From Schmidtea nova (taxonomy: Eukaryota), in NCBI GenBank assembly GCA_044892505.1, contig CM097884.1:60140001-60204000 (forward strand): a DNA stretch of 64,000 nucleotides. The letters are read 5' to 3'. A program made the translations under genes and the position numbers. Below the pieces are notes generated by a model that saw only the letters and a list, made by a program, of their open reading frames with translations, was not told the DNA's origin and did not search any database. This document shows, in pieces, positions 26,296 to 63,838 of this stretch (its first letter is position 1; each line of letters opens with the position of its first letter).

Positions 26296-26680
26296 CGATC
26301 ACGATATTTTTAAGCTCAGGGATGTTGAGAATAAAGATATCCCTAAAAATAGTAACTGATGTCTGTACTTTTAAAAATAGAAATTTGTTGATCAAAAACA
26401 AATAATGTTGACAAATGATACGCTTTGCCACTCAGAATGAAGAGCAACAAAAATAGTATTTTAACAAACATTTTCCTCATAAAATCTTCGCTTAAGAAGA
26501 ATTTTTTAGTTGTTATCGACTATTGAAAATTAAATTCAAGCATACAATATATTGAGGTCAGAAACGCATTCGAGAACACACACACTCACTATTATATTAT
26601 ATAATCTTTGTTCATATTGTTCATATTCATTACTCTGAATATGGCAACTTTCAAAGAATATTTGGTGATATGTGGATGTT

Positions 26681-26822
26681 CATTGACCTATAGGGCCTCT
26701 CATTTCGTACCCAGTCGATCCAGGGATTTACAATTGCATCCAGGGTGTCAATGTAGGAAGGCCTTGCGGAATGAAATGAATAAACCTCATGTGTCATTCA
26801 TTGCTGTCGACACCAAAAGCCA
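26681..26822 (+). repeat. 142-bp block duplicated at 37374-37515
   Basis: cattgacctatagggcctctcatttcgtacc...caccaaaagcca, first ~80 bp identical in both copies; the minus-strand frame is open in both (MTHEV...IDTLDAIVNPWIDWVRNERPYRSM). Confidence 0.85.
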
Positions 26823-27259
26823 AAATGTTCGCACTGGTCAATATATTAGGAAAACAAATTTATTTTAAAAATTGTAAAAATTATAAATAAAACGTTTCTA
26901 ATAACATTTTAAAAGGAAAGTCAGCTGGGCGATGAATCAGGATTTGAAACATCAATAATCAATTAATTTAATGTTGTTCAAGGTAGTTGGACGCGTTCCG
27001 TCAATACAAATCCACCGTGTTGCGTAATTATACGCCGAATGATGCAATAGTCGACATACAAGTCTTTCCTCTTCCGCAGTAATTGACCCTTAGCTTGGCT
27101 TGATCATATAAGCAACGGAACAATGGGAATCAGTGGGAGAGTGATTTAATTTATACTTTATTTCATTGGCAACGTCTTATATATTAGCTGTTGTTCGCAG
27201 TCAGTGTAGATACTTTTTCATTTTTTTAAACATTTTTATAAAAAACAATTAATTCTTAC

Positions 27260-27866
27260 TCAAAAACCGAGAATTAATCGGTGAAGCAAATCCCTCATAT
27301 CGCACATTATAATGCCTGTAATACGCTAGATGTAACTCCATCGGATCGCCCCATTGATAACTGCCGTTTCCGAGAGATTCATAGCGCAACAACATTCTCG
27401 TTACATCATCCAACGGATAATGCATAATTAAATAAGATAGATTGTCAAATTTCTTAGATGAAAATTCTCCATAACGAATGATATTATTGTTTCCTCCTGG
27501 CTGTATATCGGAAAAGTTTAATGCGGAATATATTTGATGAGACTCATTAATAAATTCAAGAAGTTTCTTTACGGCTTCTTTTGATTTTAAAATATTCTTT
27601 CTCCAAAAAAATTTTTTCTCTATGATTGCATTCAATAATATATTGGCTATTCTGTGTCCTAAGTTGATTTTCGATAGAAGAGGAAATGTGGCATATTTTG
27701 GAAGGGATTTATCTTCATTAATTACCAGCAGCCAGTGCTGAATGACATTTGTTCCTTCTTGTTTCTGTCTGGAATTTTCCAACATACAAATTTTATGGAA
27801 ATATGTGTAAAGTTCTTGAGTAATAAACACCCATTGTTTATATTCGATTTGAATTGAAGTATCCAT
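27260..27866 (-). CDS. PCIF1-like: 5' coding exon, copy A, of the PCIF1/CAPAM-like methyltransferase (202 codons + 1 nt)
   Basis: ...MLLRYESLGNGSYQWGDP...YNVRYEGFASPINSRFL matches PCIF1 LLRRY...LQ..LP...FGV.FECFASPLN. Ends TTG A|GTAAG (donor 27259-27258), phase 1, compatible with exon 15749. Confidence 0.8.
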
Positions 27867-27890
27867 AAATTCACTATCTCAAATAAATTA

Positions 27891-27942
27891 CTAAAATTAT
27901 TTTTTGAAAAAAGTATAATAATAAAAATTTTAGAAAACTTAC
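27891..27942 (-). other. 5'-UTR spliceosomal intron (52 nt) of PCIF1-like copy A; 51-nt equivalent at 43473-43523
   Basis: GTAAGT...TTTTAG (copy A) and GTAAGT...TTTCAG (copy B); in-frame stops between acceptor and ATG show it is untranslated. Confidence 0.65.
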
Positions 27943-28495
27943 ATTTTCACGAAGATATCAAGAATTAAAAGTAAAATTCTAACAGTATCTTTAATAATGA
28001 AATGAAAATTAAATTTATGTATTGCGAGCTCAGTTATTTAAACAATTATTAGCTCATTTAAATATTGTAACCGAAAGATGATTTATTTAAATAATGAATA
28101 ATTTAAAGATGATAATAATGAATAATTTAAATATTTTAAGATAAAAACTTTAAAAATAATGAAGTCATTGATATTACAATGTTGAATTTTACTAAAATTT
28201 GTGTAGAAAAAAAATTTATAAATCTAAAGATATTTTAATATTAACAATAATTTCAATTATAAGTAGGTCGACTATCAATTAATTTGTTTATTGTTAGGCA
28301 AAAACTAGATTTTGTTTAAATAGCGTGGTAATACAGAATGTAGAGAGCGAGCGCAAACTAAATCTAAAACATGATCAAGAGAAACACTTAGTAACAACAA
28401 AGTAATAACAATACACATAAATAATTGATTAAAACAAGTTTAAAAATTAAACTAAACAAAACGCATCAAATATACACGTGAAAAACACATAACAT

Positions 28496-31400
28496 AGTTA
28501 TATAAATTGTTGTTTTAGTTATCGAAAAAAATAGTGTGTTTAATAATAAATAATTTATCTTGTCTATTTGTTTTTTCAATGAATTTAGAAGGAGACTTAA
28601 CTGGCTAACCACACCAAGAAATCAATACCGTCATTAGACGGCAGACGACTAAAAGTAGGTTGGAGTCCTTATAGAAGCAGGCTTGAGAGATATTAAATTT
28701 TAACGTGAGGAAGTTCGATGGAAAAGTTGGTTGTGAGGCCAAATTATGGCAAAAAGATATTTTAGAATAGTTGAGGATAAAAGACCAAAGTTTAGTCAAT
28801 ACGTTTGATCTCTTACTGACAGAGGCAGCAGCTCTATTATTGGAGTAGCCAAAGGAGAGAAAATGACAGATCTAATAGCGAAAGAATGGTTCATTGAAAC
28901 GTTTACAGTAAAGAAAACGATTACGAACAAGATCGTGGAACTTGCCCAATTACATCAAGAAGGCGATGAGAGATTTAAGAATGAGAACGTTAGTAAAGAG
29001 CGTATTCAGATCGGAAATGTTGGATGAACAAATTGACGGGGATATAATTTTAAACAGAGCAAAAGACGAACGGGTAAGAGATATTTATGCTAGTTAAATT
29101 AACTAGTGTTAAAGAAGCAAGGGATATGGCGAAAATTCAAGAAAAATTGAAATGACAAATGGAAATAATTCTAATATGTGCACTATACGAAGAGAATCCT
29201 ACGCATCTATTGCAAATAAAAGTAAATTTACCAGACGTCCTCAAAAGAGCATGACAGAGAAACCGAGATAGATTCACAAAGAACGACGAGAACTAAGTTA
29301 TGGATCAGCAAGATCCAAAAAATAATCAATACCTATGGATAATAGAGGAGGAAAAACTGAGAACAAACGGTAAAGGTTTTCAGAAAAAAAGGAAGATTCC
29401 AACAGTATCACTGAAAGATATCGCCAGAAGAATATTTAACGACAGTAGGTCGAGAACGACACCAACACCAGAGAAATTAGCTCTTGGTCAATGTTTCTGC
29501 TGTGGAGAAAAAGGTTATCGACGTTTTGAATGTCCAATGAAAGATCAATGTCTCATTTGTAGCAAGGAAGGCCATCGATTTAGAGACTGTAATTTACTGA
29601 ATAATAGAAACAATTACAAGAAAAAGATAGCATGTATATATGAAGGAAATCGTTGAAATAACAACAACGAAGACACCGAGGATGCCTATAGCAATTTGGA
29701 TGAAATGATACAAAAGTCAATGGACAAAGCAAAAACAGAGACGTTCCCCTTGCTTTCATTTCGTCAGTGGTATCAGCACAATAGAGAAGAGAGAGAATCG
29801 AAATGGAGTCAAGAAACTGAAGATGTACGAGACGGATGATTGAAGAAAGTGGAGTAAGATTATTTTGAATGGGACAGAAATAGATAAGCTGTGGGACTCG
29901 GGAGCATCAGTGTCAGTGATGAGCAAGAGGAGTTGGAAAAATGGGAAAACCAAAGCTGACAGTAAGTAATATTTCATTATGTGGAGTATTTTTATCAAGT
30001 TCGGAAAGACCACTAGGAGAAATGACGATATAAAGAGATTATAATGGCAAGAGGAGAAAAATAAGTGTGATTGTAGTTACAGACATACGGCCAAATTTTA
30101 TTGGCGGTGTAGACACGATGGAAAAGTTTGGAATTCAGCTGGTAAATAAATAAAATCGAAGCATCACTAGTAGGGAAGACATATCAGAATTCACGAGAAA
30201 TGCAAGCACTGGAGATGTTGATGAGTTGTAAAGACGAAGATTTTAAAAGAATTATACGAAAATTCAGAGAAATTTGTATGACATCAACTTTTGACTTGGG
30301 ATTCACTGAAAGGGTAAAATATGAGATGTATATAACAGGAGATTCAGTAAGAATACAGCCCAGAAGACAACCAATGCACCTGGAACAAAAACTAGACGAG
30401 TTAATCATCAAATCACTGGTAGCAAAGGTCATCAATAAATGTAAAAGTGTATGGAACGCCCCGCTGGTGATAATCGCAAAGACAATTCAATTACAATGTG
30501 TGTAAATTACAGAGGATTGAACGCCATTACAAAAAGTGTCGTTTCCAATGCCAGATACCCGATTCCTTTTGGACTGCTTGGTAGATTTGAAGTATTTTAC
30601 TTCCATTGATCTAGAACATGCCTACTACCAGGTCGGGATGGCAGAATAAATACAAGACGTCACAGATTTTAGTACAGGGCAAGAACAGTTTTGCTTCAAC
30701 AGGTTACCTTTTGGACATGCAACAGCCCAGCAACATTCCAGAGGAGGATGCACTCAATGCTGGAAGGAATATTGTTTAAATGAGTGTTGGTTTACTTAGA
30801 CGATATATTGATTTATGGGAGACAGAAAAGAACATAATTTATGGCAATAGGAAGTATTCAAAAGGATACAAATAGCAGGGTTGAAGATTAATCCTGGTAA
30901 ATGCGAGCTATTGAAATTAGAACTGACATTTCTGGGACACACTGTTAGTTCCAAGGGGATAAAGACGAATGACAAGAAGATCAAAAAAATTTAAGGAGGC
31001 AGAGATACCGACATGTGCTAAACAATTAGGGTCGTTTCTGTGCATGACTAATTACTACAGGAAGTTCATAAAAGATTACACAAAGATTTCTGGGCCGTTA
31101 TACGCAGCCATTTCCGAATGCGAGAAAATGATTAATTGGTCAGAAGATTACAAAAGTTTTGAATTGCTTTAAACAATATTTTGTGAAGCCCCAATCCTGA
31201 ATATTCCAAGAGTAGAGGACAAATTTATTCTGGATACATATGCCAGTTTTGAAACGATCAGAGCTATTCTGTGTCAAAAGAGAGGAGACAAAACATAACT
31301 AGTTATTGCGAATGAATCAATACATTTAACGGCAAACGAAAAATGGTATTGTGTGACAAGGAATGAATTACTTGCAATACACAAATATGTTTTATATTTC

Positions 31401-32994
31401 AGACAATATCTATATGGGAAGGCTTTCGTAGTACGAAGAGATCACAAAGCACTAGTCCTTATGAGATACACCAAGAAAGCAATGAGTCCACAGCTTCAGA
31501 CATGGCTGGCCGACTTTTAAGGATAGGACTTTGACTTGCAAAATAGGAAAGGAGAAGAACATGGGAATGCGGACGGTATCTCAAGGATCAATGGAATGTT
31601 ATGTGCTCAATGCCAGACACAACATAAAGACACGAAAGAGGAAAAAACTTAGAATGAGACAATAGTAAATTACAGAAGACTGAACCAATGACAAGACTAT
31701 TAAGCAAACAAGAGGATGACGTAGACTTCATACACATTCAAGGGTATTACTGGGAAAAGAGAATGGAGGAACTCTGAAAAGGAAGAAATTCCCTTTTAAT
31801 TTGCTGAAGAACACAAAATTCAAAAACGGATTATTACTGCTTGAGAAAGATGGAAAGGATCTCATATTAGTACCATTAGAGTACATTAATACTTTAGTCA
31901 AAACATACATACAGAAATGTGTGATATTGGAGAAATTAGGAAATTAAGAAATTAACAAGTTACATGAGCGATTTATTTTGGCCAAATATGTAATGGACAA
32001 TTCAAAGCTGTTAAGGATCATGTGAATATGTTGTAAACAGAAGATAGTACAGGATAAAACAAAGGAACGACTGATACCGATAATGAGTTCAGATTTCCTA
32101 GAACAATTGGTTGTAGATATAGCCCACATGAAACCTCAATGAAGTTACAGATATTTATTAGTTATTATTCACCGTTTGAGCAAGATGGTTAGTCTAACTG
32201 CACTGAAATACAAGATGAAAAATCGTTGTTCAAAGCCATAATAGATAAGTGAATATATAAATTCGGTAAACCACGAAGTCTTTTATCAGAGAAATGTAAA
32301 AATTCGACACCATGTTCGTTAAGACACACCTAGGGAAGTTAGGCATCAAACAAAACCTGAGTCGCTATACCAACACTAATCGAATGGGCTGGTGGAAAGG
32401 ACAATACGAACAGTCAGAGACTTATTAACAATTTCTATATTCAGTTGATTAGGGGAGAGAAATTGGGTAGATTTACTCCCACGTATAAAATTTTGTATCA
32501 ATGCGACAACACAGAGTACAACAGGATTCTCACCATTCGAAATTGTTTTCGGGAGGAAAATTAATCTACATTCAACACTACCACAGACAAATTTGAACGC
32601 AACCGAAATAAGCAAGCAGATTCTAGCAAACAGTGAAAGAGCAGCAAAACGAATGAAAGAAACAGACACGGATAGAAGGACGCATAGAACTTTTGAGGTA
32701 AGGGAGAAAGTATTGGTTCGGAAAGAACCACAAAATCGGGACAAATATGACCTACAGTACGAAGGGCCGTTCGTAATATCAAGATTTTTGTCAGAACACA
32801 GAGTAGAGTTGATCGATGGAAATTCAAAGAAACTTCGATGCACCGAATGGCTGAAGAGATGGACAGATCCTTAAATAAAGGAGGAGTTATATAAATTGTT
32901 GATGTTTTAATAATCGAGAAAGAAAGTGTGTTTAATAATAAATAATTAATCTTGTCCATTTGTATTTTTGATGAATTTAGAAGGAGACATAACT
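28496..32994 (+). mobile_element. Full-length but decayed Gypsy LTR retrotransposon with AGTTA...TAACT LTRs
   Basis: LTRs 28496-28602 and 32885-32994 (~85-90% identical), TSD AACAT (28491-28495, 32995-32999), TGG PBS overlapping the LTR end, purine tract before the 3' LTR. Two CCHC-like knuckles (29300-29656), protease DSGAS (~29890), RT YLDD (~30795), integrase SNGLVER (~32380), YEGPF tail; many stops and frameshifts. Confidence 0.92.
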
Positions 32995-33749
32995 AACATA
33001 AAAACATGAATTGTGGAATAAAATTACAGATTTAGAAAAACTAAAATATATTCTAGAAGAGATTTTCGATTTTTAATTTAAAAACTCAGAAAAAAGGGAA
33101 AGCAAAATTGTTTTAGAGAAAAATTGGCAAATTGAATTAAATTAGAAAAATTTTCATTTAAAAATAATTTTAGATCGAAATTAAAGTATTTAAAATTTTA
33201 TTAAAACTTTATATAAAAAATAATAATTCAATTTTACTTAAAACTGTTTAATTTAGATTTTTGGAAGAATCGAAAATTCCTCCTAGAACTATTTGTTTAA
33301 ATGCATCAGCAAAAATAACAGTCGGAAATAAGTATTTATACCCCCATCAAAATCAATAAATTCAGAATTTGTGACTACCAACCAGGTCTAATTTGGTTAG
33401 ACGAAACTCTGCCCAAAAATTTGATAAACGGGAAAACTTTCGAATATCGAGTTGCCTATTTTCTAACCACCAGCTCTAAAATTCCGAAAATCAACGAACC
33501 TCTCAGCTAATACCTATCGGATACCGACAAATCATTTTCAGACTTATCCGGAGCAATCTTTGTGAAATGTAAGGTTTCTACTTGTTAAGCATGGGTTGGA
33601 GTATCATCCCTGTCAACCCTGGCTCGGTATTTTATTTTAATTTTATTGTTATGTCTGATTTACATCATTTTTGAGTTATCATTGATAAGTTAATTATTTA
33701 TGAATTATATTATTTCATATGTCATTTAATTTTCTTTTATACATATATT

Positions 33750-35560
33750 TAAATTTTAGTCATTAATATTTGATTTGCCAACCTTTCAGGCGTTTTCGTT
33801 TCAAAATGCTCGATTCTTCTTTATTTACCATTTAAAACGTCTATCGAGCGAATTATCATTGCTGAAATCATGCCATACTTCGTTGATCTTTTTGAGTTCT
33901 AAGCTATGTTTCGATGGTAGTACTTTGAGGGTTTCTTCCTGTTTGTTTTTAATCTGCTCTGTTTCGACTAATTCGCCGAATTCGAGTTTGTTGATGATGT
34001 CTGTTTCTATCCTTGATAGTGTGTCTGCTGCTATGTTTGCTGCTCCTGCGATATAAATGATTGTACAATTGAACTGTGAGATGAAGTTTGATTGCCTATT
34101 ATTTGTCTTGGGGTGGGTTTTTCATTTGTATTGCATTAATGAGTGGTTTATGGTCTGTAAGGATCTTGAAGTTTCGTGCTTCCACCAAGTGTTAGAAGTG
34201 TTTTATGGCATGGTGGATTGCGAGGAGTTCTCGGTCGAAGGTTAAGTACCTTATTTTGTGTGCTTTGAGTTTTTTTTTGAAAAGAACTAATCGGTTGTTT
34301 GTCGTGTTCGTTTTCTTAATATAAAGTCGATCCCATTGCGAATCCAGTAGTGTTACTTGGGACATGGTAACTTTAGCTTTCTCAAAGTTTTTTTTTATTT
34401 TTCGGTCCAGTCAACTTTCACGTTTGTTTTCGTTTTGATAAGGTCATTTAGAGGGGCTAAAAGTTCATTGCAGTTAGAAATGTATGCGTGGTAAAAGTTT
34501 ACCATTCCCATAACTCGTCTGAGTTCTCTGTTTGTGTTTGTAGTTTGAACTGTTGGATTGTGTTTATTTTCTATTGGTTTTGTACTTATTTCGTTTATGG
34601 TGTGTCCAAGGAAATTTATTTCTTTTTTTTGAAATTCACGTTTTTGAATGTTGGTTTTAAGGTTTGCGGAGACCAGTGTCTGAAACACCTTGTCGATATC
34701 GTTAAAATGTGTTTCTTTGTCCAGACTTGCTATTAGAATGTCTTCCAGGTATGCGATTGTGTTTTGGTTGTTTTTCAAGGTTTTATCCATGAATCGTTGG
34801 AACGTCGCAGCTGTGTTTCGTAAACCGAATGGCATTCTGTTCTATTCGAACATGCCAATTGGTGTTACGATTGCAGTCTTTTTAATGTCCTCTTTCCTGA
34901 TCGGGACTTGATAGTAGGAGTTCAGTATGTCTATTTTGGAGAAGAACTTTGCTCCTTTTAATCTGTTTATTATATCCCTTATAATTGGCAGGGGGTAGTT
35001 GTTTGGCTCTGTGAACTAGTTTAACATTCTGTAATCACCACAAGCTGTTCATTCACCGTTTGTCTTTTTCTTGAGCATTAGGAGTGTACTTGGATTGTAC
35101 TGGATTCCCATTTGTAATAATTCAGTTAGGTTTTTTGATTCTTCGTCGAATTTTACTGGTTCGATGAGTTTGTCGTATTTCTTGAATAAAGCTATTATCT
35201 CAGGGCCGTGTTTTGGTGTTTTACTTGGTTTGTTTTTTTTACATCAGCCTGTATTAAGCCAAAGTATACTTTTGACTTAGACAGTGTTGTGGCTTTGTCA
35301 AATTTTCTGCTTGACGCTAGATTTTCGAAGTGTTTAGTTTTGACAGTCAACTACTAAATTGTAGTGTGCTAAAAAGTCAGCGCCGATAATAGACTGCTGT
35401 ACTTACGCTATTATAAACGTCCAAGTGTATTTTTTTGAATTTATTGTGATGGTTAGAATACAATCGCCGTATGTTTTGATATTGGTGACGTTAGCTGCTG
35501 TTAGAGATTTATCTGTGATTTGGGGTTTCTTCGCGAGTAGCATTGTAATATTGAGAATAT
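33750..35560 (-). pseudogene. Internally deleted Gypsy pol remnant (protease-RT-integrase tail)
   Basis: 34395-34835 reads MPFGLRNTAATFQRFMD...AYLEDILIAS (RT); protease-like and integrase-like fragments flank it. LTRs not delimited. Confidence 0.8.
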
Positions 35561-35569
35561 CGATTCGGA

Positions 35570-36307
35570 AAACCGAAGAGCATTTTAACAGATAGAGGCC
35601 GTAATTTCGAAGGGAATTTTCTAAGACAGAGACTACAGAAACTTGGAATCAAACAGGAATTCAGATCACATTACCAGCACCAATCTAATGGATTATCCGA
35701 ACGAGCCATGCGGACGGTAAGGGATCTTATTACAGCGACATTGGCAGGTGGATGTGAAGAGAGATACTGGCATGAACTTCTACCTATAAATGAGTTCAGT
35801 ATAAATAGCAGTCAATTGAGTGCTACAGGTTATCACCATTTAAGATAATTTATGTATGGAATAGTAACCAACATTCAAACCTGAAACAAGCAGAGATATC
35901 AAGAAGCGAATGGATGAAAGACACAATATATAACTCGAGAAAAGCCGCAGACATTATGAGAGCTATGAATAAGACAAAGAGAGGCACTCGTGTTTTTGAG
36001 GAGGGGGATGAGGTAATCGTACTCAAAGAACCGTAGAACAGGCACTAAGATGGTATGCAGTACGAATGTCCATATAAAATCATCAGATTTCTATCTCCTC
36101 ATCGAGTCGAACTACATTCGCAAGAAGGAAAGAAAGAAAGAAGAATCGAGTGGCTGAAGAAGTGGAAAAATTATTAAGCAGGACAGTTAGATATTTATAT
36201 GAACTTGTGTTTTAATAATTGATTATTTGGCACTTTTTATAAAATTTTAATTAAATAAATTTATGACCGAATGGAGTTAGTCTTTTAAAACAGAGTTTGA
36301 TTTAACT
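35570..36307 (+). mobile_element. 3' fragment of a second AGTTA...TAACT Gypsy (integrase C-terminus + LTR)
   Basis: QSNGLSERAMRTVRDLI and EWLKKW paralogous to the 28496-32994 element; candidate LTR AGTTAG (36185) to TAACT (36307). Confidence 0.65.
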
Positions 36308-37359
36308 ATATAAGATATTAAGTTGAGATTTTAGGAACCTAAACATAAGTATTACGTAGAAAAAAATCAATACATAAGCATATACATGCCAGTAACAATA
36401 AATACGAGATAATCAAAAAATTTATATGAATTGTAAAAGAAAAAAATCTTGACTTTTGAAAACACTAAGACATACGTCAAAATCCAAGATATCCCAATCC
36501 GACTAAAGCAGACTCGGCTGTATTTATTGAACGTATTTTGATTAAAAGAAATGTAGTTACTTATAGAAAAAGTTTTTTTAAAAACATGATAATATTTCTA
36601 ATGACAGATAAGATTATATCTAAGAACAAAGTTGAATATAATAATTNNNNNNNNNNNNNNNNNNNNNNNNNNNNNNNNNNNNNNNNNNNNNNNNNNNNNN
36701 NNNNNNNNNNNNNNNNNNNNNNNNNNNNNNNNNNNNNNNNNNNNNNNNNNNNNNNNNNNNNNNNNNNNNNNNNNNNNNNNNNNNNNNNNNNNNNNNNNNN
36801 NNNNNNNNNNNNNNNNNNNNNNNNNNNNNNNNNNNNNNNNNNNNTTTAACAAACAAATTACCAGTTCAAAATCACCAGCTCACATTTAAAAGTTACTATA
36901 AATCGTGATTATTTATATTCTAAAGATATATTTCAAAAAGAAAACTTTTTTCAAAAAAAACTTGTTATCTTAGAAATTTAAAAAAAGAAAAGTCTTCAGT
37001 TTTATTAGATTAAAACGTGATAAGGTTTTTCTAAAACTAATCCATTTATCAAGTAGTCTAATGTATTGCATTTATCAAATGAATAGGTAAATGAAACAAT
37101 CTATTGAAAAGTTTACCAAGTCAGTATAATTATTATAATGAAGGGTCCGAAAGGTGTTTGAGGACAACTTTATGCTTTTCAAAAACAGAATACATAATAA
37201 CAAATAATAATTTTATTAATGATGATGCTATAAGGATAAATATAAATTCTTTTTATTATTTTATTCAATAAAGCCACCATTAGTTTCAATAACGTTTTCT
37301 GAGCAAGAATGAAATTGTTTTCATGCTTATATTATATAATATATGTTCATATTGGGCAT

Positions 37360-38070
37360 TACTCTGAATATAGCATTGACCTATAGGGCCTCTCATTTCG
37401 TACCCAGTCGATCCAGGGATTTACAATTGCATCCAGGGTGTCAATGTAGGAAAGCCTGGCGGAATGAAGTGAAGAAACCTCATGTGTCATTCATTGCTTT
37501 CGACACCAAAAGCCATGACAGATGCATGAAATTTTGTATTAGAACTTCAGGATTGTAATCTGTCATTTTGTCTGTTAATTTTCTGATCTTGTAAAACGTT
37601 TTTCTCGTTTGAGAAAAACCAAACCACATTTGCTTTTACTGAATGTTTAAGTTTACTTAAGAGACTTTTAGATACGATTAAACGATTTTCTTTCGTTTTT
37701 TTACATAAATTCTATTTCCCTCATCACGTAAGATATATCCGATGATTTCATGAGCAAGACTTCTAATTGTTCGTTCACACATGGAAATTTTTTAAAAATG
37801 CATTTGTTGATTTCCACAAATGGTCTGTCGATAAATTGAGGTGTTCTGATGGTGTCATGGCATTTGCGCTTTGATACTTGTAATATATCTCTATCGTCGG
37901 TTTTGAACTCTTAAGGAACTTTGTAGACAAATGATTTGGCAACTTTTAAAAATCGGGATATTTATAAATGGCATCAATATTCCTATATAATAAATCAGAA
38001 TTCCTAAAGAACTGACAGCAGTAAACTCCCTTCTAAAATATTGGCAAGCACTGACCCATTTTATTAGAAT
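37360..38070 (-). pseudogene. Decayed ORF of unknown family
   Basis: Long protein-like stretches between scattered stops (YCCQFFRNSDLLYRNIDAIYKYP...SMCERTIRSLAHEIIGYILRDEG...NPWIDWVRNERP). Confidence 0.35.
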
Positions 38071-38449
38071 AAATCCATATTTAAACATATTTTGAATATT
38101 TGTTATTTTAAAATTTGGTTACTCGTACTTTAATATGGCCAAAACAAGTAAATTAATAATTATAAAAGTAATTGTTAGGATTATCATCCTTCTAAACTTC
38201 ACAATTAAATTCAGAATCACTAAAAAATCCATAAAATTTATTCAATAATTTATTCAAAATGATTTCATTTGTTACGATATTTAAACAAATTTACTATTGT
38301 TTTATTTTAAATATTTTTTTAACTTTTAAATTTTTCCTTTAAAATCATTTGTAAATTTTCAATTTCACATTTTCAATATTTTGGATATAATAACTTTAAA
38401 AATTTTTAGAAACTTCCAATTTCCCTCATAACTCCATTTTAGAGAATTT

Positions 38450-38760
38450 TTTAAAGTTTTTCTACGTTTCTTTCAATCTTTTTACTATTTTCATTTCTTA
38501 AGCTGTATCGTCTCTCATGCACTTTCTTAAAAACTTGTTCTGGCGCCTCATATCTATTCTGGCTTTTATTGCATGTTTATACTTTTACTAACACGCCTTC
38601 TTCGACATTAAATTTCCTCAATGTTCGTTCTTCCTATTCTTCTTTTATCTACTTATTCGGACCCGTAACATCTTTCCCTGTTAACCTTTTATCCAAAAAC
38701 TATCACTGCCGAGCTTTTTCCTACCGTTATTTTATTTGGTTGCTTTTAATGTGAGATCGA
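38450..38760 (-). pseudogene. Gypsy integrase C-terminal (GPY/F-like) remnant
   Basis: KFNVEEGVLVK...NRYEAPEQV resembles FEVGEKVLV...KYEGPF.V of the neighbouring elements. Confidence 0.4.
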
Positions 38761-38769
38761 TTTGTGGGA

Positions 38770-39200
38770 GTATCTCTGCCAAATCCGCCCCCCATAGCTA
38801 CGCTGGTGAATATAAAGTAACGAAACAATTATTTTTGAAATTTAATATGAAACAATAATTTGAAATTTTATACGAAAAAAACATTATAATGATAAAGGTA
38901 AAGCAAAATTGCAGATTAAACATTCTACATAGATTAGATTAGAATAGAATTTTATTGGTAAGAAAGACAAACAACTGAAAAATGATAAAGCTAAAATAAT
39001 TGCAGATTAAACATCCTACATAATAGTTTTAGTTCATAACCACAAAGGAACACCGACTAAAGCAGACTCGACTGTATTTATTGTACGTATTTTGATTAAA
39101 AGAAATGTAGCTAATTAAAAAAAGTTTTTTTTAAAACATGATAAAATTTCTAATGACAGATAAGATTATTTATATCTAAGAACAAAGTTGAATATAATAA
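38770..39200 (+). repeat. Dispersed repeat family (38770-39052 ~ 41148-41410; 39053-39200 ~ 36500-36646; 36845-36940 ~ 40961-41060)
   Basis: Colinear AT-rich blocks matched by eye. Confidence 0.7.
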
Positions 39201-39215
39201 TTTCACTATTTTAAA

Positions 39216-39267
<52 letters not shown>

Positions 39268-39864
39268 CTGTTTCTCGCTATTTATGTTCAATTTTTACAA
39301 TCACGTTTTATTTAATACCCCTTTTACGGTTTTATTTCACAAAATTCTATCAATTCCTCAGGTTCTAAAAAGATACTTGAATGTCGAAGAAATTTTGTTG
39401 TGAAATTATTTAAGGAAAATGAAAATCTTTTCCCAGCAGGTAATAATTATAAATAATATTTATAAATAAATATTTTTAATTAAAATTTTTAATTTAATTA
39501 AAATTTTAATTAATTATAAATATTATAGCTATCTAAATCTAATGATTATTCTTTTACTTGGCATTGTGACATTACCAAGGAGTGAATAAAATTCAGAAGC
39601 AATGAGTATCAATTATGAGTATCAAACATTTAGCTTATGTGAAAAGTCATCAATAATGCAAAATTATAATATTATATAAATTAATATAACCTAATTTTTC
39701 TAAAATACTCATATTTGATGAAAATGCCTATATGATGCATTTAAAATCATTTTTTCTTTTATTGTTCTGATTCGTATTCAACCACTCCTAATAACAATAT
39801 TAATATTTGTCATAATGAGTCCCTTCGAAATTTTTTTTACTTCAATCAATCGTTGAACCATATT

Positions 39865-39937
<73 letters not shown>

Positions 39938-42841
39938 CACTTGATAAAGGCTGTGCCGAAATATTGTGTTATTGTTTATAAAAAAAAAATTTTTGATCTA
40001 TAGTCATTATGAGAATTATTGATAATAATAATAAAAAAAGATAATTATGATTATATATATATATATATGTAATGAGTGCTTACTTGTTATTACTTGTTAT
40101 CCCCCCTTTTTATAATTAACTGATGGATAGCAATTATGCCTTTAAATTATAATAAAAATTTGAAAAATTAATTTCAAATGATAAATAAATCAATTCCTAT
40201 AGTAATAATCAGAATTACTATAGGAATTAGACAATACGAATTAAAAAGAAAATTGATCACAAAATACAACTATCATAAAAATTTTTAAATTGCAAATTTT
40301 CAAAAACTATCAAGTCATCAAAGCAGAAGAATAAATTAAAGGAAGGATAAAAGAAAATTAATCTAAAGAAAAAAGTCTAAAAGAAACTTCAATATCTTAA
40401 GAGCTCCGGAAGGTCCAAGGTCGAAAAACAGAAATTAGCAATAAATCAAATAATCAAAAATTAGCAAATTATCAAAAATTAACAAGTTATCTAAACAGAA
40501 GAATTAAATTAAAGGAAGGTTAAAAGAAAATTAATTTAAAGAATAAAAGTCTATAAGAAAGTTAATATCATGAGATCTCCGGAAGGTCCAAGGTCGATCC
40601 ATCTATAAATTGAGATAATAATAAAGTAATATTTTCGTGGATTTTTTCGGTTTATTTTTTAATAAAAATTGTTAAATTAATCGTGTTATTAAATTGTTAT
40701 TCTGTCATTGTAAATTTTACCTTACACAGCAAACACCCCGAGTGTCTGCAAACGAATACCGTAAGACTCTCTCGGGCGCTTACATTTCTCTTTCTCACAC
40801 AATACAAACAGCAATAAANNNNNNNNNNNNNNNNNNNNNNNNNNNNNNNNNNNNNNNNNNNNNNNNNNNNNNNNNNNNNNNNNNNNNNNNNNNNNNNNNN
40901 NNNNNNNNNNNNNNNNNNNNNNNNNNNNNNNNNNNNNNNNNNNNNNNNNNNNNNNNNNNNTTCAACAAACAAATTAACAGCACAAAAGCACTAGCTCACA
41001 TTTAACAGTTACTATAAATCATGATTATTTATATTCTAAAAATATATTTCAAAAAGATGACTTTCAAATTTAGACTTTTTTCGATTTGTAAGGATGTACA
41101 GGTTCAATCAATGATATAGATCGATATACAACATTAAAATGCTTGTTCTATCTCTGCCAAATTCGTCCCCCGTACGCTGGTGAACATAAAGTAACTAAAC
41201 AATTATTTTTGAAATTTAATATGAAATTTTATACGTAAAAACCTATTAAAATGATAAATTTAAAGCAAAATTGCAGATCAAACATTCTACATAGATTAGA
41301 CTAGAATTTTATTGGTAAGAAAGACATACAACTGAAAATGATAAAGCTAAAATAATTGCAGATTAAACATCCTATATAATAGTTTTAGTTCATAACCACA
41401 AAGGAACACCAAGAAGGATATTGTGCCAAGCAGAGATAATATTAACAGTGGATTAGATTAGAATTTTATAAGCATGAAAGACATTATTATTATTAATTAA
41501 TAATTAATTCAAAAACACGAAAATTTAAGAATATTAAAGATATTATTATTATTTTTATGTAGTACACTTATAGTGTAATAGAAAAACTCCCAAATAGGAT
41601 CACACACAATTTCATCATTTGACCCTGCTCTTTCGACTTGCTCGTCAGTAGCGGATCGACGAGAACGCAATCAGGTTTTTACGCATAAATTTGATTCCGA
41701 AATTCCAAGGGTGGGTAGGCAGAAAATTGAATGGGTAAAGACAATAAATAGTAATATGTAGTCGTCTAATATTACTGACTGTGTTGGGTAGACTCTTCTT
41801 GCATGTTAGCTTAAAGAGTAAGTCGGTAGGATGGGATATTGCTCACCACAGAAGAGATATTCTAGATAGTCAACCAGGTAAGTATTAAAACCATTTAAAA
41901 AATCACCAAATATCAGGAAATATTTAATAAAGGTACGAGTTGATTGCCTTCGCAATGATTCCCGTAAATGAAGCTAATTGATGGGAAACCTGCGATGCCA
42001 ACGTGCGGGATTTGGGATCGGAACATGCCACAAATAACCCGAGCAGTGCATTAGCAACACGTAGAAAGAAACATTTATTCTCAGCAAATCGCTTACAATA
42101 TTGCATGCAAATCTTACCAATAAAATATTTCCACTTTTTATGGAAATTTTAGGCTAGTTATACAATTAAACCAGTTTTTCACAGGTTTTATTAAAGTTTT
42201 ACTTTGGAATCGTATTTAATTTGTAAATTCTTGCATTTCTTGCAAGTAGGTTGGTGATAATTCTATCTGCGTTTCCACATTTCCCATCATTCCCTATCGA
42301 TTTGTAGGGATGCACAAGTTCAATCGGTGATACAGATCGATACGCAACATTAAAATGATTGTTCTAATTTGTTCACCGTTTAAATGTTCGCAATGGTCAA
42401 ATTATTAGGAAACAAAGATATTTATCGTTTCGTGTCCAAATTTATTTTATAAATTGTAAAAATTATAAATAAAACGTTTCTAATAACATTTTAAAAGGAA
42501 AGTCAGCTGGGCGATGAATTAGGATTTGAAACATCAATAATCAATTAATTTAATGCTGTTCAAGGTAGTTGGACGCGTTCCGTCAATACAAATCCACCGT
42601 GTTGCGTAATTATACGCCGAATGATGCAATAGTCGACATACAAGTCTTTCCTCTTCCGCAGTAATTGACCCTTAGCTTGGCTTGATCATATAAGCAACGG
42701 AACAATGGGAATCAGTGGGAGAGTGATTTAATTTATACTTTATTTCATTGGCAACGTCTTATATATTAGCTATAGTTCGCTGTCAGTGTAGATACTTTTT
42801 CATTTTTTTAAACATTTTTATAAAAAACAATTAATTCTTAC

Positions 42842-43448
42842 TCAAAAACCGAGAATTAATCGGTGAAGCAAATCCCTCATATCGCACATTATAGTGCCTG
42901 TAATACGCTAGATGTAACTCCATCGGATCGCCCCATTGATAACTGCCGTTTCCGAGAGATTCATAGCGCAACAACATTCTCGTTACATCATCCAACGGAT
43001 AATGCTTTAATAAATAAGATAGATTGTCAAATTTCTTAGATGAAAATTCTCCATAACGAATGATATTATTGTTTATTCTTGGCTGTAAATCGGAAAAGTT
43101 TATTGCGGAATATCTTTGATGAGACTCATTAATAAATTCAAGAAGTTTCTTTACGGCTTCTATTGATTTTAAATCTTTGTTTTTCCCAAAAAAATATTTC
43201 TCCTTGATTGCATTCAACAATATATCGGCTATTTCATGCCCGAAGTTGATTTTCGATAGCAGAGGAAATGTGGCATATTTTGGAAGGGATTTATCTTCAT
43301 TAATTACCAACAGCCAGAGCTGAATGACATTTGTTCCTTCCTGTTTCTGTCTGGAATTTTCCAACATACAAATTCTATGGAAATATGAGTAAAGTTCTTG
43401 AGTAATAAATAGCCATTGTTTATATTCGATTTGAATTGAAGTATCCAT
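42842..43448 (-). CDS. PCIF1-like: 5' coding exon, copy B, of the PCIF1/CAPAM-like methyltransferase
   Basis: Same length, same GTAAG donor (42841-42840) and phase as copy A; 22 amino-acid differences by manual alignment; no stops or indels. Confidence 0.78.
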
Positions 43449-43919
43449 AAATTCACTATCTCAAATAAATTACTGAAATTATTTTTTGAAAAAAGTATAA
43501 TAATATAACTTTAGAAAACTTACAGTTTCACGAAGATTTTTAGAATTTAAAGTAAATTCTAGCAGTATCTTTAATTATGAAATGAAAGTTATATTTATGT
43601 ATTGCGAGCTCAGTTATTTAAAAAATTATTAGCTCATTTAAATATTGTAACCGAAAGATGATTTATTTAAATAATGAATAATTTAAATATTTTAAGATAA
43701 AAACTTTAAAAATAATGGAATCATTGATATTACAATGTTGAATTTTACTATTATTTGCATAGAAAAAAATATTTATAAATCTAAAGATATTTTAATATTA
43801 ACAATAATTTTAATTATAAGTAAGTTGACTATCAATTAATTTGTTTATTGTTAGACTAAAAGTAGATTTTATTTGAATAACGCGTATTACAGCACGTAGA
43901 GAGTGCTCACGAAGTAAAC

Positions 43920-46900
43920 TGTGATAATTAATTTATTTTAGATAATCAATTTAAGAAAAGAAAAAAGATTTGTTTATATCGAGTGATTTTCAAGGAGAAA
44001 CAGAATTTGAAAAAGAATCTTGTAGTAAAAAATAAACGTTGAATCGAGTTTTATTTCAAATATTTTGTCACAAGCTATCACGGCTATAATGGAGATGCAA
44101 AAATTTATCAAGCTCTAGGATGGAGTAGGTGAGTTTTCGACTTTGCCTAAGAAGTTAAAGTTAGCGGGCAAGCATAAAAAAATCGAAGATTTGGCCTTCG
44201 TTCTCCATTACTGCTTGATGGACCAGATTTTCTTGTTTATGATCACCTGACAGAGAAGGACAAAGAAAACATCGACGCAATTGAAAAATCCCTATCAGAT
44301 GCCTTTTCGATGGATGGATTCTAGGCATATGACACGTTTCGCATTCGTTTGTTGAATGGTGAGCCAGTTGAAGTTTTTCTTGCTGATCTGCAGCGATTAG
44401 CTACGCAGGCTGGAATAAATGATGGTGGGCTTCTCAAGAGAGCATTTGTAGTCGGACTTCCATCAATGGTTTCCCACCAACTCAGAGCTTCAGTAAGGAT
44501 CTTCGAAATGAACCTCTCAGAAGTTGTTAGACAAGCTCGAGCAATAATATCAGAACAAAATGGCTCCACTGGTCTAATTTCAGTGAAAGGAAGTGGTTCT
44601 GCGCCGGGTAAAGAAGTCAAACTTTGCTACGGATGTGGAAAATCGGGACATTTCACAAATAACTTCCCCTCTCAAGAGTGTTGGACCTGTGGAATCAAAG
44701 GGCATTCGTCGAGACAATGCTCTTCAAACGCACAGAGAAACCCCAGAAGAGAAACTGGAGCGCCAGCGGTTTCTCAATGATGTTAGGGATGGCGCGAGTA
44801 CTTGTCAGACTCAGAGTGAATGGAAAATCGTGCAAGCTAGAGTTGTTGTTGCAGTAGATGGTAGAAGAGTCCATTCTAATGGAGAGAATCAGTGTCATTT
44901 ATCTGTTCGAGGATCAAGTTTTTTGTTAAATTGCTTAATAATGACGAATCTTGTAACCGGAGTGGATTTTATTTTAGGTCTCGATGCGATTGAACGCCTT
45001 GGGGGAGTCTTAATTGACAATTATGGAGTACAGTTTGGTGAATGCACTTGAGTATCCATGCTGGCTTTATTTCAAGAACAAGTGAAAATCTACGATGAGG
45101 ATTTCGCTGCAAGTTTTGACGGAGAAAAGCTGACAATATCTTGGAAATGGAAAGACAAACCTCCAATATTGAGGAACAACGTTGCCGAATACGCAATTAA
45201 GCCTGAAGTATGACAAAAATATGAAGCTGAAGTAGAGCGATGGATAATGGAAGACTGGCTAACCTCTACTGAAGAAACCGGTCGAGGAATTCTTCCTCTT
45301 CTAGCTGCAATACAAGAAAACAAAGGAAAATTTCGACCTGTTCTTGATATTTGGGAACTCAATGAATTTGTGAAGAGTCACACTGGTGATAGTGATGTTT
45401 GTGGTGAGAGCCTAAAACAATGGAGACAGATGGGAGAACAGCTATAGATGCTTGATCTAGAAAATGCTTATCTAGAGTTGCATGTAAGCAAAGATCTTTG
45501 GGAATTTCAAAGGATTCGCTACAAAAAGAAGACGAATTATCTTACAAGACTAGGATTTGGTCTTAGTTGTGCTTCAAAGATAATGTCCTTAGTATTGAGA
45601 AAGGTGCTGAGTCTTGATTTGCGAATCTTGAATGCGACAGATCACTACATCGATGACATAGCTTTGAACACGAGTTTGGTGAGTATCGATAAAGTGGTGA
45701 AACATTTGGCTCAATTTTGATTAGTGACGAAGCCAGCGGAACTGTTAGTGGATACAAATTTTCTCGGTTTAAAAATTGAACGCAGTCGTCACGGTAATCT
45801 GTTATGGTCAAGAGGAAATATAGTTGACCCAATTGACGGTAAAGTTACTCGGCGTAACTTTTTTCTATTTGTGGATAGCTTATTGGGCATTATCCGGTCG
45901 TGGGGTGGCTCAGAGTGGCTTGCAGTTTTATCAAGAGAATTGCGGATGGTACAAATTGGGATAATCTCGTTGGAGCAGAGTGCGAATCGAGATTGACTGA
46001 AGTGATGAGTCTCATTGAACTGTACGATCCAGTCAAAGGAAGCCGGAATGTAAACACCAGGGATCACTGTACTTTATGGTATGTTGCTAGCAGTTTTGCT
46101 CTGGTGTCGTATTAGTGATAAATCGCCACGTCGTGGAGGATGCAACTGGCTCAGGAAAAGTGATGATTATTCATATATAAACGTCGCTGAGCTCGATGCA
46201 GTTCTTAAAGGCGTAAACTTAGCAATCAAATGGGGCATTAAAAAATCGAGCTGATGGTGGATTCGGTGACGGTAGAAGCTGGTTGAGAACAGTTTTAAGA
46301 TTCGTGTCCATGTAATTTCAGAGACTCTGGTTAGACGTCGCTTGGGAATAATAAAAGAGATTATCGAGAATGACAGTATTCTTATTCAGGTGCAATTGGT
46401 GAAATCAGCGGAAAACCAAGCAGATATACTGACACGCTTCCAAAGGGGTGGTTGAAGTCTAGAGCGTCCTTTGACTGCGTGGGCTTATCCTCAGAAGAAG
46501 TAAGGAACCGTCATGACAAACACCATTTTGGTCTGGAAAAATATATTTATTTCATTCAGTTAGAAACCCACACACCCTACGAGACGTCATAAAAATGTGG
46601 TAAGAAATTGTATTGAATGCAAATCTATCGATCTGTCGCCAATTAAGTGGGGAAATGGATCATTAGAAGTCAATAAAAATTGGAAAAACTAGCTGTAGAT
46701 GTAACGCACTACGAGGGATCCATTTTCTTGACTATCGTTGATTGTGAGCCTAGTATATTTGCCATTTGGAGAAGGATACCAAATGAAGATGCTCAAAATA
46801 TTGTGAAAAATCTCGAAGAAGTGTTTCGAGAGAGAGGTCCACCTCGTTAGCTACTCATGGAGAATGGGCCTAGTTTTCATTCTAAATCTTTACAAGATTT

Positions 46901-47618
46901 ATGTTGTAAATGCGATGTAAAGCCGACATACAGATGTGCCTACCGTCCATCTGGGAATGGGATCGTGGAGAGAAACCACCGGACCCACGCAGCCAGGACT
47001 CGTTTAGACCCACCGGATATTGTTTATTGGTATAACATGGCACCCAAAGACGCGAAGAATCAAAGTAAAACTCCATCAGAGGGGCTATTTAAGTACCGAT
47101 GGAAATTTCACAAAGGTGTCGAGGAGGAGCGCGTAGTATCTAGTAAATTTAAAACTGGTCTTGAATCTTGTTATAAAGCCAATTCCAACCAAATGCACTG
47201 ATCAGTGGTCCAGTGGAATCATCACTGGCATTAATTCAACTACCAACGTAGAGGTTGATGGAGTACCGCGTCATGTTGCAGACATCCCAGTGTTGCCAAA
47301 TCAACCTATCGAATCCAGCGATGTCGAATGCGAATTTGAAGACAAGCAGGTTGACATCAGAAATCCAGAAGAGAGTGAGGAAGACACGCGCTTGGCTCGC
47401 AATCGAAGGAAGCTTTCCTATCTTGATCAGTACGAGTTGGATTCGTCGTACTGATCACGGGGGAATGTGATAATTAATTTATTTTAGATAATCAAATTAA
47501 GAAAAGAAAAAAGATTTGTTTATATCGAGTAATTTTCAAGGAGAAACAGAATTTGAAAAAGAATCTTGTAGTAAAAAATAAACGTTGAATCGAGTTTTAT
47601 TTCAAATATTTTATCACA
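43920..47618 (+). mobile_element. Gypsy LTR retrotransposon, full length, internally decayed
   Basis: 153-bp TG...CA LTRs (43920-44072, 47466-47618; 3 mismatches), TSD TAAAC (43915-43919, 47619-47623), GGGGGAA purine tract. Gag knuckles CYGCGKSGH/CWTCGIKGH, RT LDLENAY...HYIDD, integrase ENGPSF...GNGIVERNHRT; many stops and frameshifts. Confidence 0.93.
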
Positions 47619-48697
47619 TAAACTTAAGATAGGATAAAGAGAAACGCCGAAGAAAACAAAGTAACAACAAAATACAAATAATTGATTAAAACACGTTTAA
47701 GAATTAAACTGAATAAAAGCGCATCAAATAAACACGTGAAAAACACATATATAAAATAAAAACATCAGTTATAAAATAAATAAACAGATTAGGAAAATTA
47801 ACATATTGGTGGGTTTTTGACTGTCAATATGACATTGACGTTATTATGGCTCTTATCAACAACTCAACATACAACGTATTAAATTAATTATCTTGTTGCC
47901 CGTCACAATGTAACGTGGGCAATGCAACAAACGGTGGGTATTCGCAATTAGTGAGCGTCGAAAATTCGAAACTATGATTGACCGAATATCTACTGGGTCC
48001 AAGGGCTACCGATAGAATGTTTAATGCCCATTTTTGTCCCTTATTCAACAATTTAACTACGGATACTCCTCTAAGTCAGTGAAACAAAATAATTTTATCA
48101 ATAAAAATTTATAAATTTATTCCAATTACTCATAGTTAAAATAAAATATAGACAGTTCAAAGCATCATTAGAAAGTTATGTCCAAATACACGTATTTAAG
48201 CCGTGAGCAAAAATAAAATCAACTCAAACATTTCAATGAGTTCCAGCAAGCGTTCCAGGTTTGATTATTCGATCTTAAATTCAATTCAGGTATTGATCAA
48301 ATTCACCCACAAAGCTTACAAGTAGATTCTTCGATTTTCTGATCAAAATTTAAATCTGAATAAATTCAATTATTTCAATCAGCTGCTATACCTTATATTG
48401 TCAAAAGTCACACGCATTTTTAGTTGATTCACAAGCTCATTTTCAAAAGTACCATCACAACCCAATTCAGGGATCAAATATTCCGGTAAAAATGCATATA
48501 TTCGTGGGTATTTGATTTCTGTTGATTTTGACTAAACTAATATTATTTTCCTGATTCTTTAAATTTCTTTATTTTTGTGTTAGTAAATTTAACTAAACTC
48601 TATTTACCCTCAGTGATGTTCAATAATTAACTTTTTTATTTATTATCAAGTTGGCACGTTTATAAAAATATATATTTTAATTTGATAAATTGTTAGT

Positions 48698-56270: not shown

Positions 56271-56287
56271 ATAAAAAAAAATGAATT

Positions 56288-63821: not shown

Positions 63822-63838
63822 AATTCATTTTTTTTTAT

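What the first reader, a model, noticed from the sequence alone, without database searches (positions are those of the whole stretch)
27260..43523. Two diverged, fully open first exons feeding one catalytic exon: candidate alternative-promoter methyltransferase isoform switch
Seen: the module (upstream region, 5'-UTR intron, 607-nt coding exon, donor) occurs twice, 15.6 kb apart in the same orientation, while I find only one catalytic exon. Neither copy has a stop or indel, although nearly every TE ORF nearby is broken. Both keep their splice signals. Manual alignment gives 22 amino-acid differences; 16 fall in residues 69-125 and include radical changes (R/E, I/K, W/G, I/D, G/R), while residues 149-202 are identical. 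Inference: two enzyme isoforms with the same active site but a different helical or recognition region, i.e. specificity diversification by exon duplication.
Basis: partly seen in the sequence, partly recalled or inferred. Interest (0 to 1): 0.78.

Follow-up and report, generated by a model that had tools for sequence, protein, structure and literature searches.

The report
Duplicated first exon of cap methyltransferase
A small flatworm-type relative of the mRNA cap methyltransferase PCIF1/CAPAM really does carry two intact copies of its first coding exon upstream of one catalytic exon. This looks like an ordinary partial gene duplication kept similar by gene conversion, and nothing available here shows that the second copy is ever used.

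Summary
Two 607-nt open first exons lie on the minus strand: A at 27260-27866 and B at 42842-43448. They differ at 22 of 202 residues, 16 of them in residues 69-125. There is only one NPPF catalytic exon (15322-15749).

The duplicated unit is about 1.9 kb (26592-28491). Copy B was later split by a 4.9-kb insertion and by a young LTR retrotransposon 472 bp upstream of its ATG. Both assembly gaps lie in intronic repeats and touch no reading frame.

The product (345 aa) is a compact CAPAM core with a helical domain and a methyltransferase domain but no WW domain. It groups with Macrostomum proteins.

Divergence is mosaic: 18% in exon nt 201-300 and 0-3% from nt 401 to about 390 nt past the donor. 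Synonymous change is also raised in the divergent core. Contigs from four other samples carry mixed A/B alleles. This points to gene conversion rather than demonstrated diversifying selection.

The absence of any indel in either exon suggests some coding constraint. No RNA data exist, and A's exon has a candidate acceptor that would trap B transcripts in a premature stop. The isoform switch therefore remains an untested hypothesis.

The scan had already noted the A gene and a neighbouring paralogue.

The parts
15322..15749 (-). Shared last exon (phase 1, 428 nt including the TAA stop). It encodes the catalytic half of the methyltransferase domain with the NPPF motif.
   Evidence: Sequence read. 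Pfam PF12237 scores 62.8 bits against a cut-off of 31.1. It is the only copy found by tblastn and by the six-frame HMM search.
27260..27866 (-). First coding exon, copy A (607 nt, ATG at 27866, donor GTAAGA from 27259). It encodes the helical domain and the start of the methyltransferase domain.
   Evidence: The junction is collinear with P0001.
42842..43448 (-). First coding exon, copy B (607 nt, open, same donor). It has 36 nt and 22 aa differences from A.
   Evidence: The B-specific core 43157-43290 is found unchanged in three of four other samples.
26592..28491 (-). Full duplicated unit at A (about 1.9 kb): about 625 nt upstream, putative leader exon and intron, coding exon, and about 670 nt of intron.
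   Evidence: Self-BLAST; alignment and divergence profile.
27891..27942 (-). Putative 52-nt leader intron of A (GT..AG). Its acceptor lies 24 nt before the ATG. It is predicted only and could instead be a trans-splice acceptor.
   Evidence: No RNA evidence.
43473..43523 (-). Putative 51-nt leader intron of B (GT..AG kept).
   Evidence: No RNA evidence.
37327..37515 (-). Distal intron-side piece of unit B. It is homologous to A 26592-26822 and separated from the rest of B by an insertion.
   Evidence: 96.5% over 142 nt, plus 80% over 51 nt; junction sequences.
37516..42381 (.). Insertion of about 4.87 kb in B's intron-side flank relative to A. It is repeat-rich and contains the assembly gap 40819-40960.
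42382..43903 (-). Central piece of unit B: intron-side flank, exon B and about 455 nt upstream.
43920..47618 (+). Young LTR retrotransposon inserted 472 bp upstream of B's ATG. It has 153-bp LTRs 98% identical, TG..CA ends, a 5-bp target duplication (TAAAC on the + strand), a gag zinc knuckle and a polypurine tract before the 3' LTR. It is high-copy in all four sampled runs.
47619..47749 (-). Distal upstream piece of unit B, homologous to A 28359-28491 (83%).
36647..36844 (.). Assembly gap between the copies. Its flanks match a repeat whose other copy spans about 1.76 kb between the same landmarks, so the gap is probably under-sized. It was not filled.

Best explanation
A ~1.9-kb piece of a compact PCIF1/CAPAM-type cap methyltransferase gene was duplicated upstream of the gene in the same orientation. 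The piece holds the proximal upstream region, the first coding exon and the start of the intron. The copies are paralogues, not assembly twins.

They keep exchanging sequence by gene conversion. That keeps the 3' part of the exon, the donor and about 390 nt of intron nearly identical, while a ~100-nt core (codons ~63-96) and the distal upstream region retain the older ~15-18% divergence.

Copy A, 11.5 kb from the catalytic exon, is the working first exon. Copy B is an intact partial duplicate kept open by conversion and perhaps weak constraint. It could act as an alternative first exon, but this is unproven and faces a splicing obstacle.

Shown: the anatomy, the mosaic divergence, B's presence in other samples, and family membership. 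Inferred: gene conversion as the cause, and A as the main exon.
For: - Anatomy and single exon 2.
- Mosaic divergence: 15-16% at -600..-400, 3-7% at -400..+200, 18% at +201..300, 0-3% at +401..1000. Clustering permutation P<0.0002.
- dS is raised together with dN in the core.
- In Logan contigs of four samples, every variant inside exon B falls exactly on an A/B-differing site, and the combinations differ between samples. For example, one X2 contig is A-type over 42520-43114 and B-type over 43162-309. All four samples carry A-type letters at 42894 and 43006-43010.
- B-specific flank and core unitigs are present in other samples.
- Flanks beyond the unit share no homology.
- B carries later insertions.
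- In the tree B's end branch is about twice A's (0.039 versus 0.020).
- B has Leu where 31 of 32 relatives have Arg, and A and P0001 have His.
Against: - There are no indels in either exon, against 12 indel events in 1293 nt of flanking duplicate (Poisson P 0.004; 0.018 for the less-converted first 400 nt).
- There are no stops despite 36 substitutions (P 0.10-0.17).
- Outside residues 69-125, non-synonymous changes are under-represented (P 0.02).
- These three points suggest both frames are under some selection, which fits a used B exon.
- Both copies changed relative to the outgroup.
- De Bruijn contigs can collapse or pop paralogous bubbles, so part of the apparent mosaicism may be an assembly effect.
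Confidence: 0.5

Rival explanations
1. A and B are alternative first coding exons, each with its own promoter, and each spliced to the single catalytic exon. This gives two enzymes with one active site and different helical (cap/RNA-recognition) domains.
For: - Both exons are open with identical donors and conserved upstream regions.
- There is only one exon 2.
- There are no indels in either exon.
- There is purifying signal outside residues 69-125.
- All differences lie in the helical domain, which in CAPAM helps bind the cap and RNA (PMC8287941).
- The B core is unchanged in other samples.
- Net charge of the variable sites differs (A +5, B +2, counted).
Against: - No RNA evidence exists.
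- No near-identical protein of 113-358 aa is in the 5.8-billion-protein collection.
- A's coding exon has a candidate acceptor, so a B transcript that includes it stops after 5 codons.
- An LTR insertion lies 472 bp upstream of B's ATG.
- Omega is about 1 and dS is raised in the core.
- The variable sites sit in columns that are poorly conserved across the family.
Confidence: 0.3
2. Assembly artefact. A and B are allelic haplotypes of one exon, placed in tandem when contigs separated by gaps were scaffolded.
For: - Two gaps separate B's contig from A's.
- Mosaic A/B combinations could equally come from ordinary recombination between alleles.
- The roughly 1:2 depth ratio of B-specific to shared unitigs in X2 and X4 fits alleles as well as paralogues.
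Against: - Homology is confined to about 1.9 kb. There is no similarity between 28492-36646 and 47750-64000, or between the downstream flanks.
- Local divergence of 15-18% is high for alleles.
- In X1 the shared parts are 3-4 times as deep as the B-specific unitigs.
- A head-to-tail module junction (43816 joined to 42449 through 14 other letters), absent from the window, occurs in X1 and X2. Cis-duplicated modules therefore do exist in the species.
Confidence: 0.1
3. B is the first exon of a separate, formerly complete gene copy. Its own catalytic exon is hidden in a gap or was deleted.
For: - Gap lengths are only estimates, and gap 1 is probably under-sized.
Against: - A/B homology ends about 670 nt into the intron, 11 kb short of exon 2.
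- Both gaps are flanked by repeat copies, so they most likely hide repeat.
- No degenerate exon-2 trace lies anywhere in 28-43 kb.
Confidence: 0.1

Closest known systems
PCIF1/CAPAM, the cap-specific mRNA adenosine-N6 methyltransferase (human 6IRV/6IRW, zebrafish 6IRX-6IS0)
   Same: - NPPF catalytic loop and the FASP(I/L)N region.
- Pfam PF12237 is matched.
- The predicted fold of the 343-aa orthologue aligns over 310 residues with Z 27, covering both the helical and the methyltransferase domains.
   Different: - Only 345 aa long.
- No WW domain or linker, so no obvious RNA polymerase II CTD docking.
- The near-invariant Arg of the N-I-L-E-R-W helix is His in A and Leu in B.
- Activity was not tested.
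Compact PCIF1-like enzymes from non-metazoans and metagenomes, and homologues on giant-virus-like contigs
   Same: - Same core-only architecture of about 335-480 aa.
- Some such enzymes were shown to be cap-specific m6A methyltransferases in vitro (bioRxiv 10.64898/2026.10.22.757692).
- P0003 and P0020 lie beside viral primase, poly(A) polymerase, capping enzyme and an RNA polymerase subunit.
   Different: The window's protein is only 25-28% identical to those. In the tree it groups instead with P0001, P0009/P0010 and Macrostomum lignano proteins (support 100/99). It also has an 11.5-kb intron, so it is a resident animal gene.
Variable-first-exon gene clusters (UGT1A, clustered protocadherins)
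   Same: Paralogous first exons lie in tandem, in one orientation, upstream of a shared constant exon. Each has its own upstream region and a donor site.
   Different: - There are only two copies in the window.
- Use of the second copy is unshown.
- Each copy seems to carry an acceptor just before its coding exon, which the classical variable exons lack (from my own knowledge of those loci).
- The copies are homogenised by gene conversion.

Membership tests
PCIF1/CAPAM family (Pfam PF12237) | Profile match above the curated cut-off | tested here: met
   Exon 2 peptide scores 62.8 bits against a cut-off of 31.1. Exon 1 alone scores 18 bits, below the cut-off. The family profile matches both exon 1 copies at E 2e-56.
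PCIF1/CAPAM family (Pfam PF12237) | [DN]PP[FYW] catalytic motif and conserved cofactor-binding segment | tested here: met
   NPPF is in exon 2. YEGFASPINS at the end of exon 1 aligns to FECFASPLN of human and zebrafish CAPAM.
PCIF1/CAPAM family (Pfam PF12237) | Helical domain packed on a Rossmann methyltransferase domain | tested here: met
   This was tested on the orthologue P0001 (53% and 73% identical to exon 1 and exon 2). AlphaFold pLDDT is 91.6. Z is 27.1 with 310 residues aligned to 6IRW residues 197-665. The spliced window protein itself was not folded because it has no single reference.
PCIF1/CAPAM family (Pfam PF12237) | N-terminal WW domain that binds the phosphorylated Pol II CTD | tested here: not met
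   The protein starts at the helical domain. Model residues 11-343 cover chain residues 197-665 only, and there is no WW match in Pfam. It is therefore the core-only subclass.
PCIF1/CAPAM family (Pfam PF12237) | Cap-dependent N6-methylation of the first transcribed adenosine | not testable with these tools
   This needs an enzyme assay. Only some compact homologues were active in vitro: 10 of 55.
Alternative (variable) first-exon gene architecture | Two or more paralogous first exons in one orientation upstream of shared constant exon(s) | tested here: met
Alternative (variable) first-exon gene architecture | Transcripts joining each first exon to the constant exon | not testable with these tools
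   No RNA run holds the stretch, and only four DNA contig sets were available.
Alternative (variable) first-exon gene architecture | Downstream variable exons lack a 3' splice site, so they are skipped | tested here: inconclusive
   A conserved polypyrimidine-AG lies 24 nt before A's ATG. If it is used, B-to-A splicing gives a stop after 5 codons. Whether this acceptor is real is unknown.
Alternative (variable) first-exon gene architecture | Each copy maintained by selection | tested here: inconclusive
   - Overall omega is 0.74.
- Omega is 0.23-0.42 in codons 1-68 and 126-202, which flank residues 69-125; for all codons outside 69-125 the shortage of non-synonymous change has P 0.02.
- Omega is 1.46 for residues 69-125 (not significant).
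- There are no indels (P 0.004-0.018).
- Gene conversion confounds all of these.

The most novel reading that the evidence does not exclude
The first-exon modules form a small cassette array that varies in copy number and undergoes gene conversion. The array would diversify the cap/RNA-binding helical domain of a CAPAM-type enzyme while one catalytic exon is shared. This would be a UGT1A- or protocadherin-style variable-exon system applied to an mRNA cap-modifying enzyme in a flatworm. The divergent ~100-nt core would be protected from homogenisation by selection.
Probability: 0.13. Interest if true: 0.65.

Novelty: new member of a known kind. Interest (0 to 1): 0.3.

Why it matters
If B were used, one locus would make two cap methyltransferases that differ only in the domain that positions the cap and RNA. 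That would be a natural experiment on how CAPAM chooses substrates, in a lineage where cap m6Am has not been studied.

As it stands, the locus is a clean example of a partial gene duplicate in a transposon-rich region being homogenised by gene conversion. It also adds a flatworm clade of core-only CAPAM-like genes, distinct from the giant-virus-associated ones.

Tried and rejected
- **RNA evidence.** No RNA run was found, so splicing, expression and transcript ends could not be tested.
- **Read depth.** The laid records are contigs, and the stretch held no single-copy baseline. Depth therefore could not separate paralogues from alleles.
- **Second catalytic exon.** tblastn at E 100 and a family HMM on all six frames found none.
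- **Haplotig idea.** Sensitive BLAST of the outer flanks found no collinearity.
- **Diversifying selection.** Rejected as shown, because dS and non-coding divergence are clustered in the same way.
- **ESM Atlas feature search with exon 1.** No usable hit.
- **This species' own protein.** The word-based protein search with exon 1 found only two relatives and none near-identical.
- **Mapping variable residues in 3D.** Not possible, because model coordinates are not exposed. Only secondary structure and family conservation could be used.
- **Full-length A and B proteins.** These were built only inside scripts.
- **Searches left unused.** The large exhaustive protein search and the third word search were left unused, as family identity was already settled.
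- **Rules followed.** Gaps were not filled. Read laying was given 5601 letters. The LTR element was only described.
Full report
**Observation**

The window carries two 205-aa ORFs on the minus strand, at 27249-27866 and 42831-43448. They are 183/205 identical without gaps. Each ORF crosses a GTAAGA donor after 607 nt.

Joined in phase 1 to the exon at 15322-15749, either copy gives a 345-aa protein. A 343-aa homologue from the protein collection (P0001, 51% identical) is collinear across the junction, and its C-terminus ends within a few residues of that of the window protein. The exon 1/exon 2 splice is therefore well supported by homology.

There are 22 amino-acid differences, 16 in residues 69-125, and residues 149-202 are identical. 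tblastn at E 100 and a family HMM over all six frames find exactly two first exons and one catalytic exon.

**Gaps**

The window has five runs of N. Two lie in A's intron (19917-20055 and 21862-22011). Two lie between the copies (36647-36844 and 40819-40960). None touches an exon, so no frame depends on them.

The flanks of the two inter-copy gaps are copies of each other (36499-36646 resembles 39053-39202; 36845-36948 resembles 40961-41064). In the second copy those landmarks are about 1.76 kb apart. The first gap therefore probably hides repeat sequence and is under-sized. I did not try to fill either gap.

**Anatomy of the duplication**

The core block is 26855-28347 versus 42437-43903, 93.2% identical. 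Sensitive BLAST extends unit A to 26592-28491 (about 1.9 kb). Unit B turns out to be in three pieces:
- 37327-37515;
- 42382-43903;
- 47619-47749.

Between the first two pieces lies a 4.87-kb repeat-rich insertion that contains a gap. Between the last two lies an LTR retrotransposon on the plus strand (43920-47618). Its features are 153-bp LTRs 98% identical, TG..CA ends, a 5-bp target duplication, a gag zinc knuckle and a polypurine tract. It sits 472 bp upstream of B's ATG and is younger than the duplication.

Beyond the 1.9-kb unit the flanks share nothing. The event therefore copied the upstream region, the first coding exon and about 670 nt of intron. It did not copy the whole gene.

**What the gene is**

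Exon 2 matches Pfam PCIF1_WW above the cut-off and carries NPPF. The end of exon 1 carries the FASP(I/L)N segment, which aligns to human and zebrafish CAPAM.

An AlphaFold model of P0001 (pLDDT 91.6) aligns to human CAPAM with Z 27 over 310 residues. Model residues 11-343 correspond to chain residues 197-665, which covers the helical domain and the methyltransferase domain but not the WW domain. The product is thus a core-only CAPAM-like enzyme.

A profile search finds 73 such compact proteins. Some lie on giant-virus-like contigs, next to primase, poly(A) polymerase, capping enzyme and an RNA polymerase subunit. In a maximum-likelihood tree, however, the window's proteins group with P0001, P0009/P0010 and three Macrostomum lignano proteins (support 100/99), apart from the virus-associated clades.

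I did not test that. It fits the AT-richness, the short candidate intron and the flatworm relatives.

Compact PCIF1-like enzymes have recently been shown to be cap-specific m6A methyltransferases in vitro. In CAPAM the helical domain helps hold the cap and the RNA.

**How the copies differ**

Divergence along the 1.9-kb unit is strongly uneven:

| Position relative to ATG | Divergence |
|---|---|
| -600 to -400 | 15-16% |
| -400 to +200 | 3-7% |
| +201 to +300 | 18% |
| +401 to +1000 (exon end, donor, about 390 nt of intron) | 0-3% |

The clustering inside the exon is significant (P<0.0002).

Synonymous change is raised in the divergent segment together with non-synonymous change. For residues 69-125, omega is 1.46, based on 3.5 synonymous and 20.5 non-synonymous differences (P 0.49). 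Elsewhere omega is 0.23-0.42, and the shortage of non-synonymous change outside 69-125 has P 0.02.

The variable sites fall in the least conserved columns of the family (Mann-Whitney P 1e-4). The exception is residue 44. There, 31 of 32 relatives and vertebrate CAPAM have Arg in an N-I-L-E-R-W helix, while A and P0001 have His and B has Leu. B's terminal branch is about twice as long as A's.

The simplest reading is an old duplication of roughly 15-18% neutral divergence. Gene conversion has since homogenised most of it, leaving a divergent core in a fast-evolving part of the helical domain.

**Population evidence**

Four contig sets from one study hold the stretch. Their library kind is not on record; because they cover exon, intron and flanks alike, I read them as DNA. 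Laid on 42300-47900, they show the following.
- The B-specific flank junction is present in all four samples.
- The B-specific core (43157-43290) is present without a single difference in three.
- Every variant inside exon B lies exactly on an A/B-differing position, in different combinations per sample. For example, one 859-nt X2 contig is A-type over 42520-43114 and B-type over 43162-43309.
- All four samples carry A-type letters at 42894 and 43006-43010, so two of the reference's 22 differences (I147L, M148K) are not general.
- No indel was reported in the exon.

This fits ongoing A/B exchange, although bubble-popping in de Bruijn contigs could contribute.

Two further joints are absent from the window. 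One is a head-to-tail module junction (43816, then 14 letters, then 42449) in X1 and X2. The other is a junction in X1 that joins 43918 to 47654, skipping the LTR element, through 30 unrelated letters. In X1 the shared parts are 3-4 times as deep as B-specific unitigs. More module copies or arrangements therefore exist in the species.

**Is B used?**

For:
- Both frames are open.
- There are no indels, against 12 events in 1293 nt of duplicated flank (P 0.004, or 0.018 for the less-converted first 400 nt).
- There are no stops after 36 substitutions (P 0.10-0.17).
- Donors are identical and upstream sequence is conserved.

Against, or unknown:
- No RNA data are available.
- No near-identical protein is in the large collection.
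- Conversion from a selected A copy can keep B open without B being used.
- The LTR insertion lies close to B's putative promoter.
- A's coding exon is preceded by a conserved candidate acceptor 24 nt before its ATG. A transcript started at B would be expected to splice into it and stop after five codons.

If this organism trans-splices, that acceptor could instead receive a spliced leader, which would also cut B off. These last two points are inference.

**Verdict**

The claims of diversifying selection and of an isoform switch are not supported by what can be computed here. I put about 0.5 on a conversion-homogenised partial duplicate with A as the working exon. I put about 0.3 on true alternative first exons and about 0.1 each on a haplotig and on a lost or hidden second catalytic exon.

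The gene is a new member of a known kind (core-only CAPAM-like). The architecture is a known kind of arrangement whose use is untested.

Noticed in passing
window 43920-47618: Complete-looking small LTR retrotransposon on the + strand. It has 153-bp LTRs 98% identical, a 5-bp target duplication and a gag zinc knuckle. Contig depth is in the thousands in all four runs, so it belongs to a high-copy and probably recently active family. It was described only.
   Followed up: partly
window 23494-26295: A 16-nt satellite (37 copies, 25703-26289) and an inverted 7-copy array of the same unit (23500-23608) bracket MULE transposase and FLYWCH ORFs (24379-25493). This is probably one MULE element with repeat-rich terminal regions, lying just downstream of unit A in the intron.
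   Followed up: partly
runs X1 and X2, joint 43816 to 42449 with 14 letters between: Head-to-tail junction of two exon-1 modules (unit about 1.37 kb) that does not occur anywhere in the window. This indicates an extra tandem copy or a structural variant elsewhere in the species.
   Followed up: partly
run X1, joint 43918 to 47654 with 30 other letters: A contig that skips the LTR element but replaces the next 30 bases with unrelated letters. It could be an empty-site allele with a diverged stretch or a third module copy. Unexplained.
   Followed up: no
window 39227-39264 and 39867-39904: Perfect 38-nt inverted repeats about 640 nt apart, inside the 4.87-kb insertion. Possibly a MITE-like element.
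   Followed up: no
window 9650-10371 and 54054-54792: A 750-nt direct repeat, 89% identical, 44 kb apart, outside the finding. Likely a dispersed transposon fragment.
   Followed up: no
window 17286-17924 and 34395-34835: A hAT dimerisation-domain ORF in A's intron and a reverse-transcriptase fragment between the copies.
   Followed up: partly
loci L002/L003 (8001-9083) and L004 (8001-9041): Compact PCIF1-like genes on giant-virus-like contigs, next to C962R-type primase, viral poly(A) polymerase, capping enzyme/N7-methyltransferase, NUDIX and Rpb5. This suggests viral cap m6A methylation and is little covered in the searched literature.
   Followed up: partly
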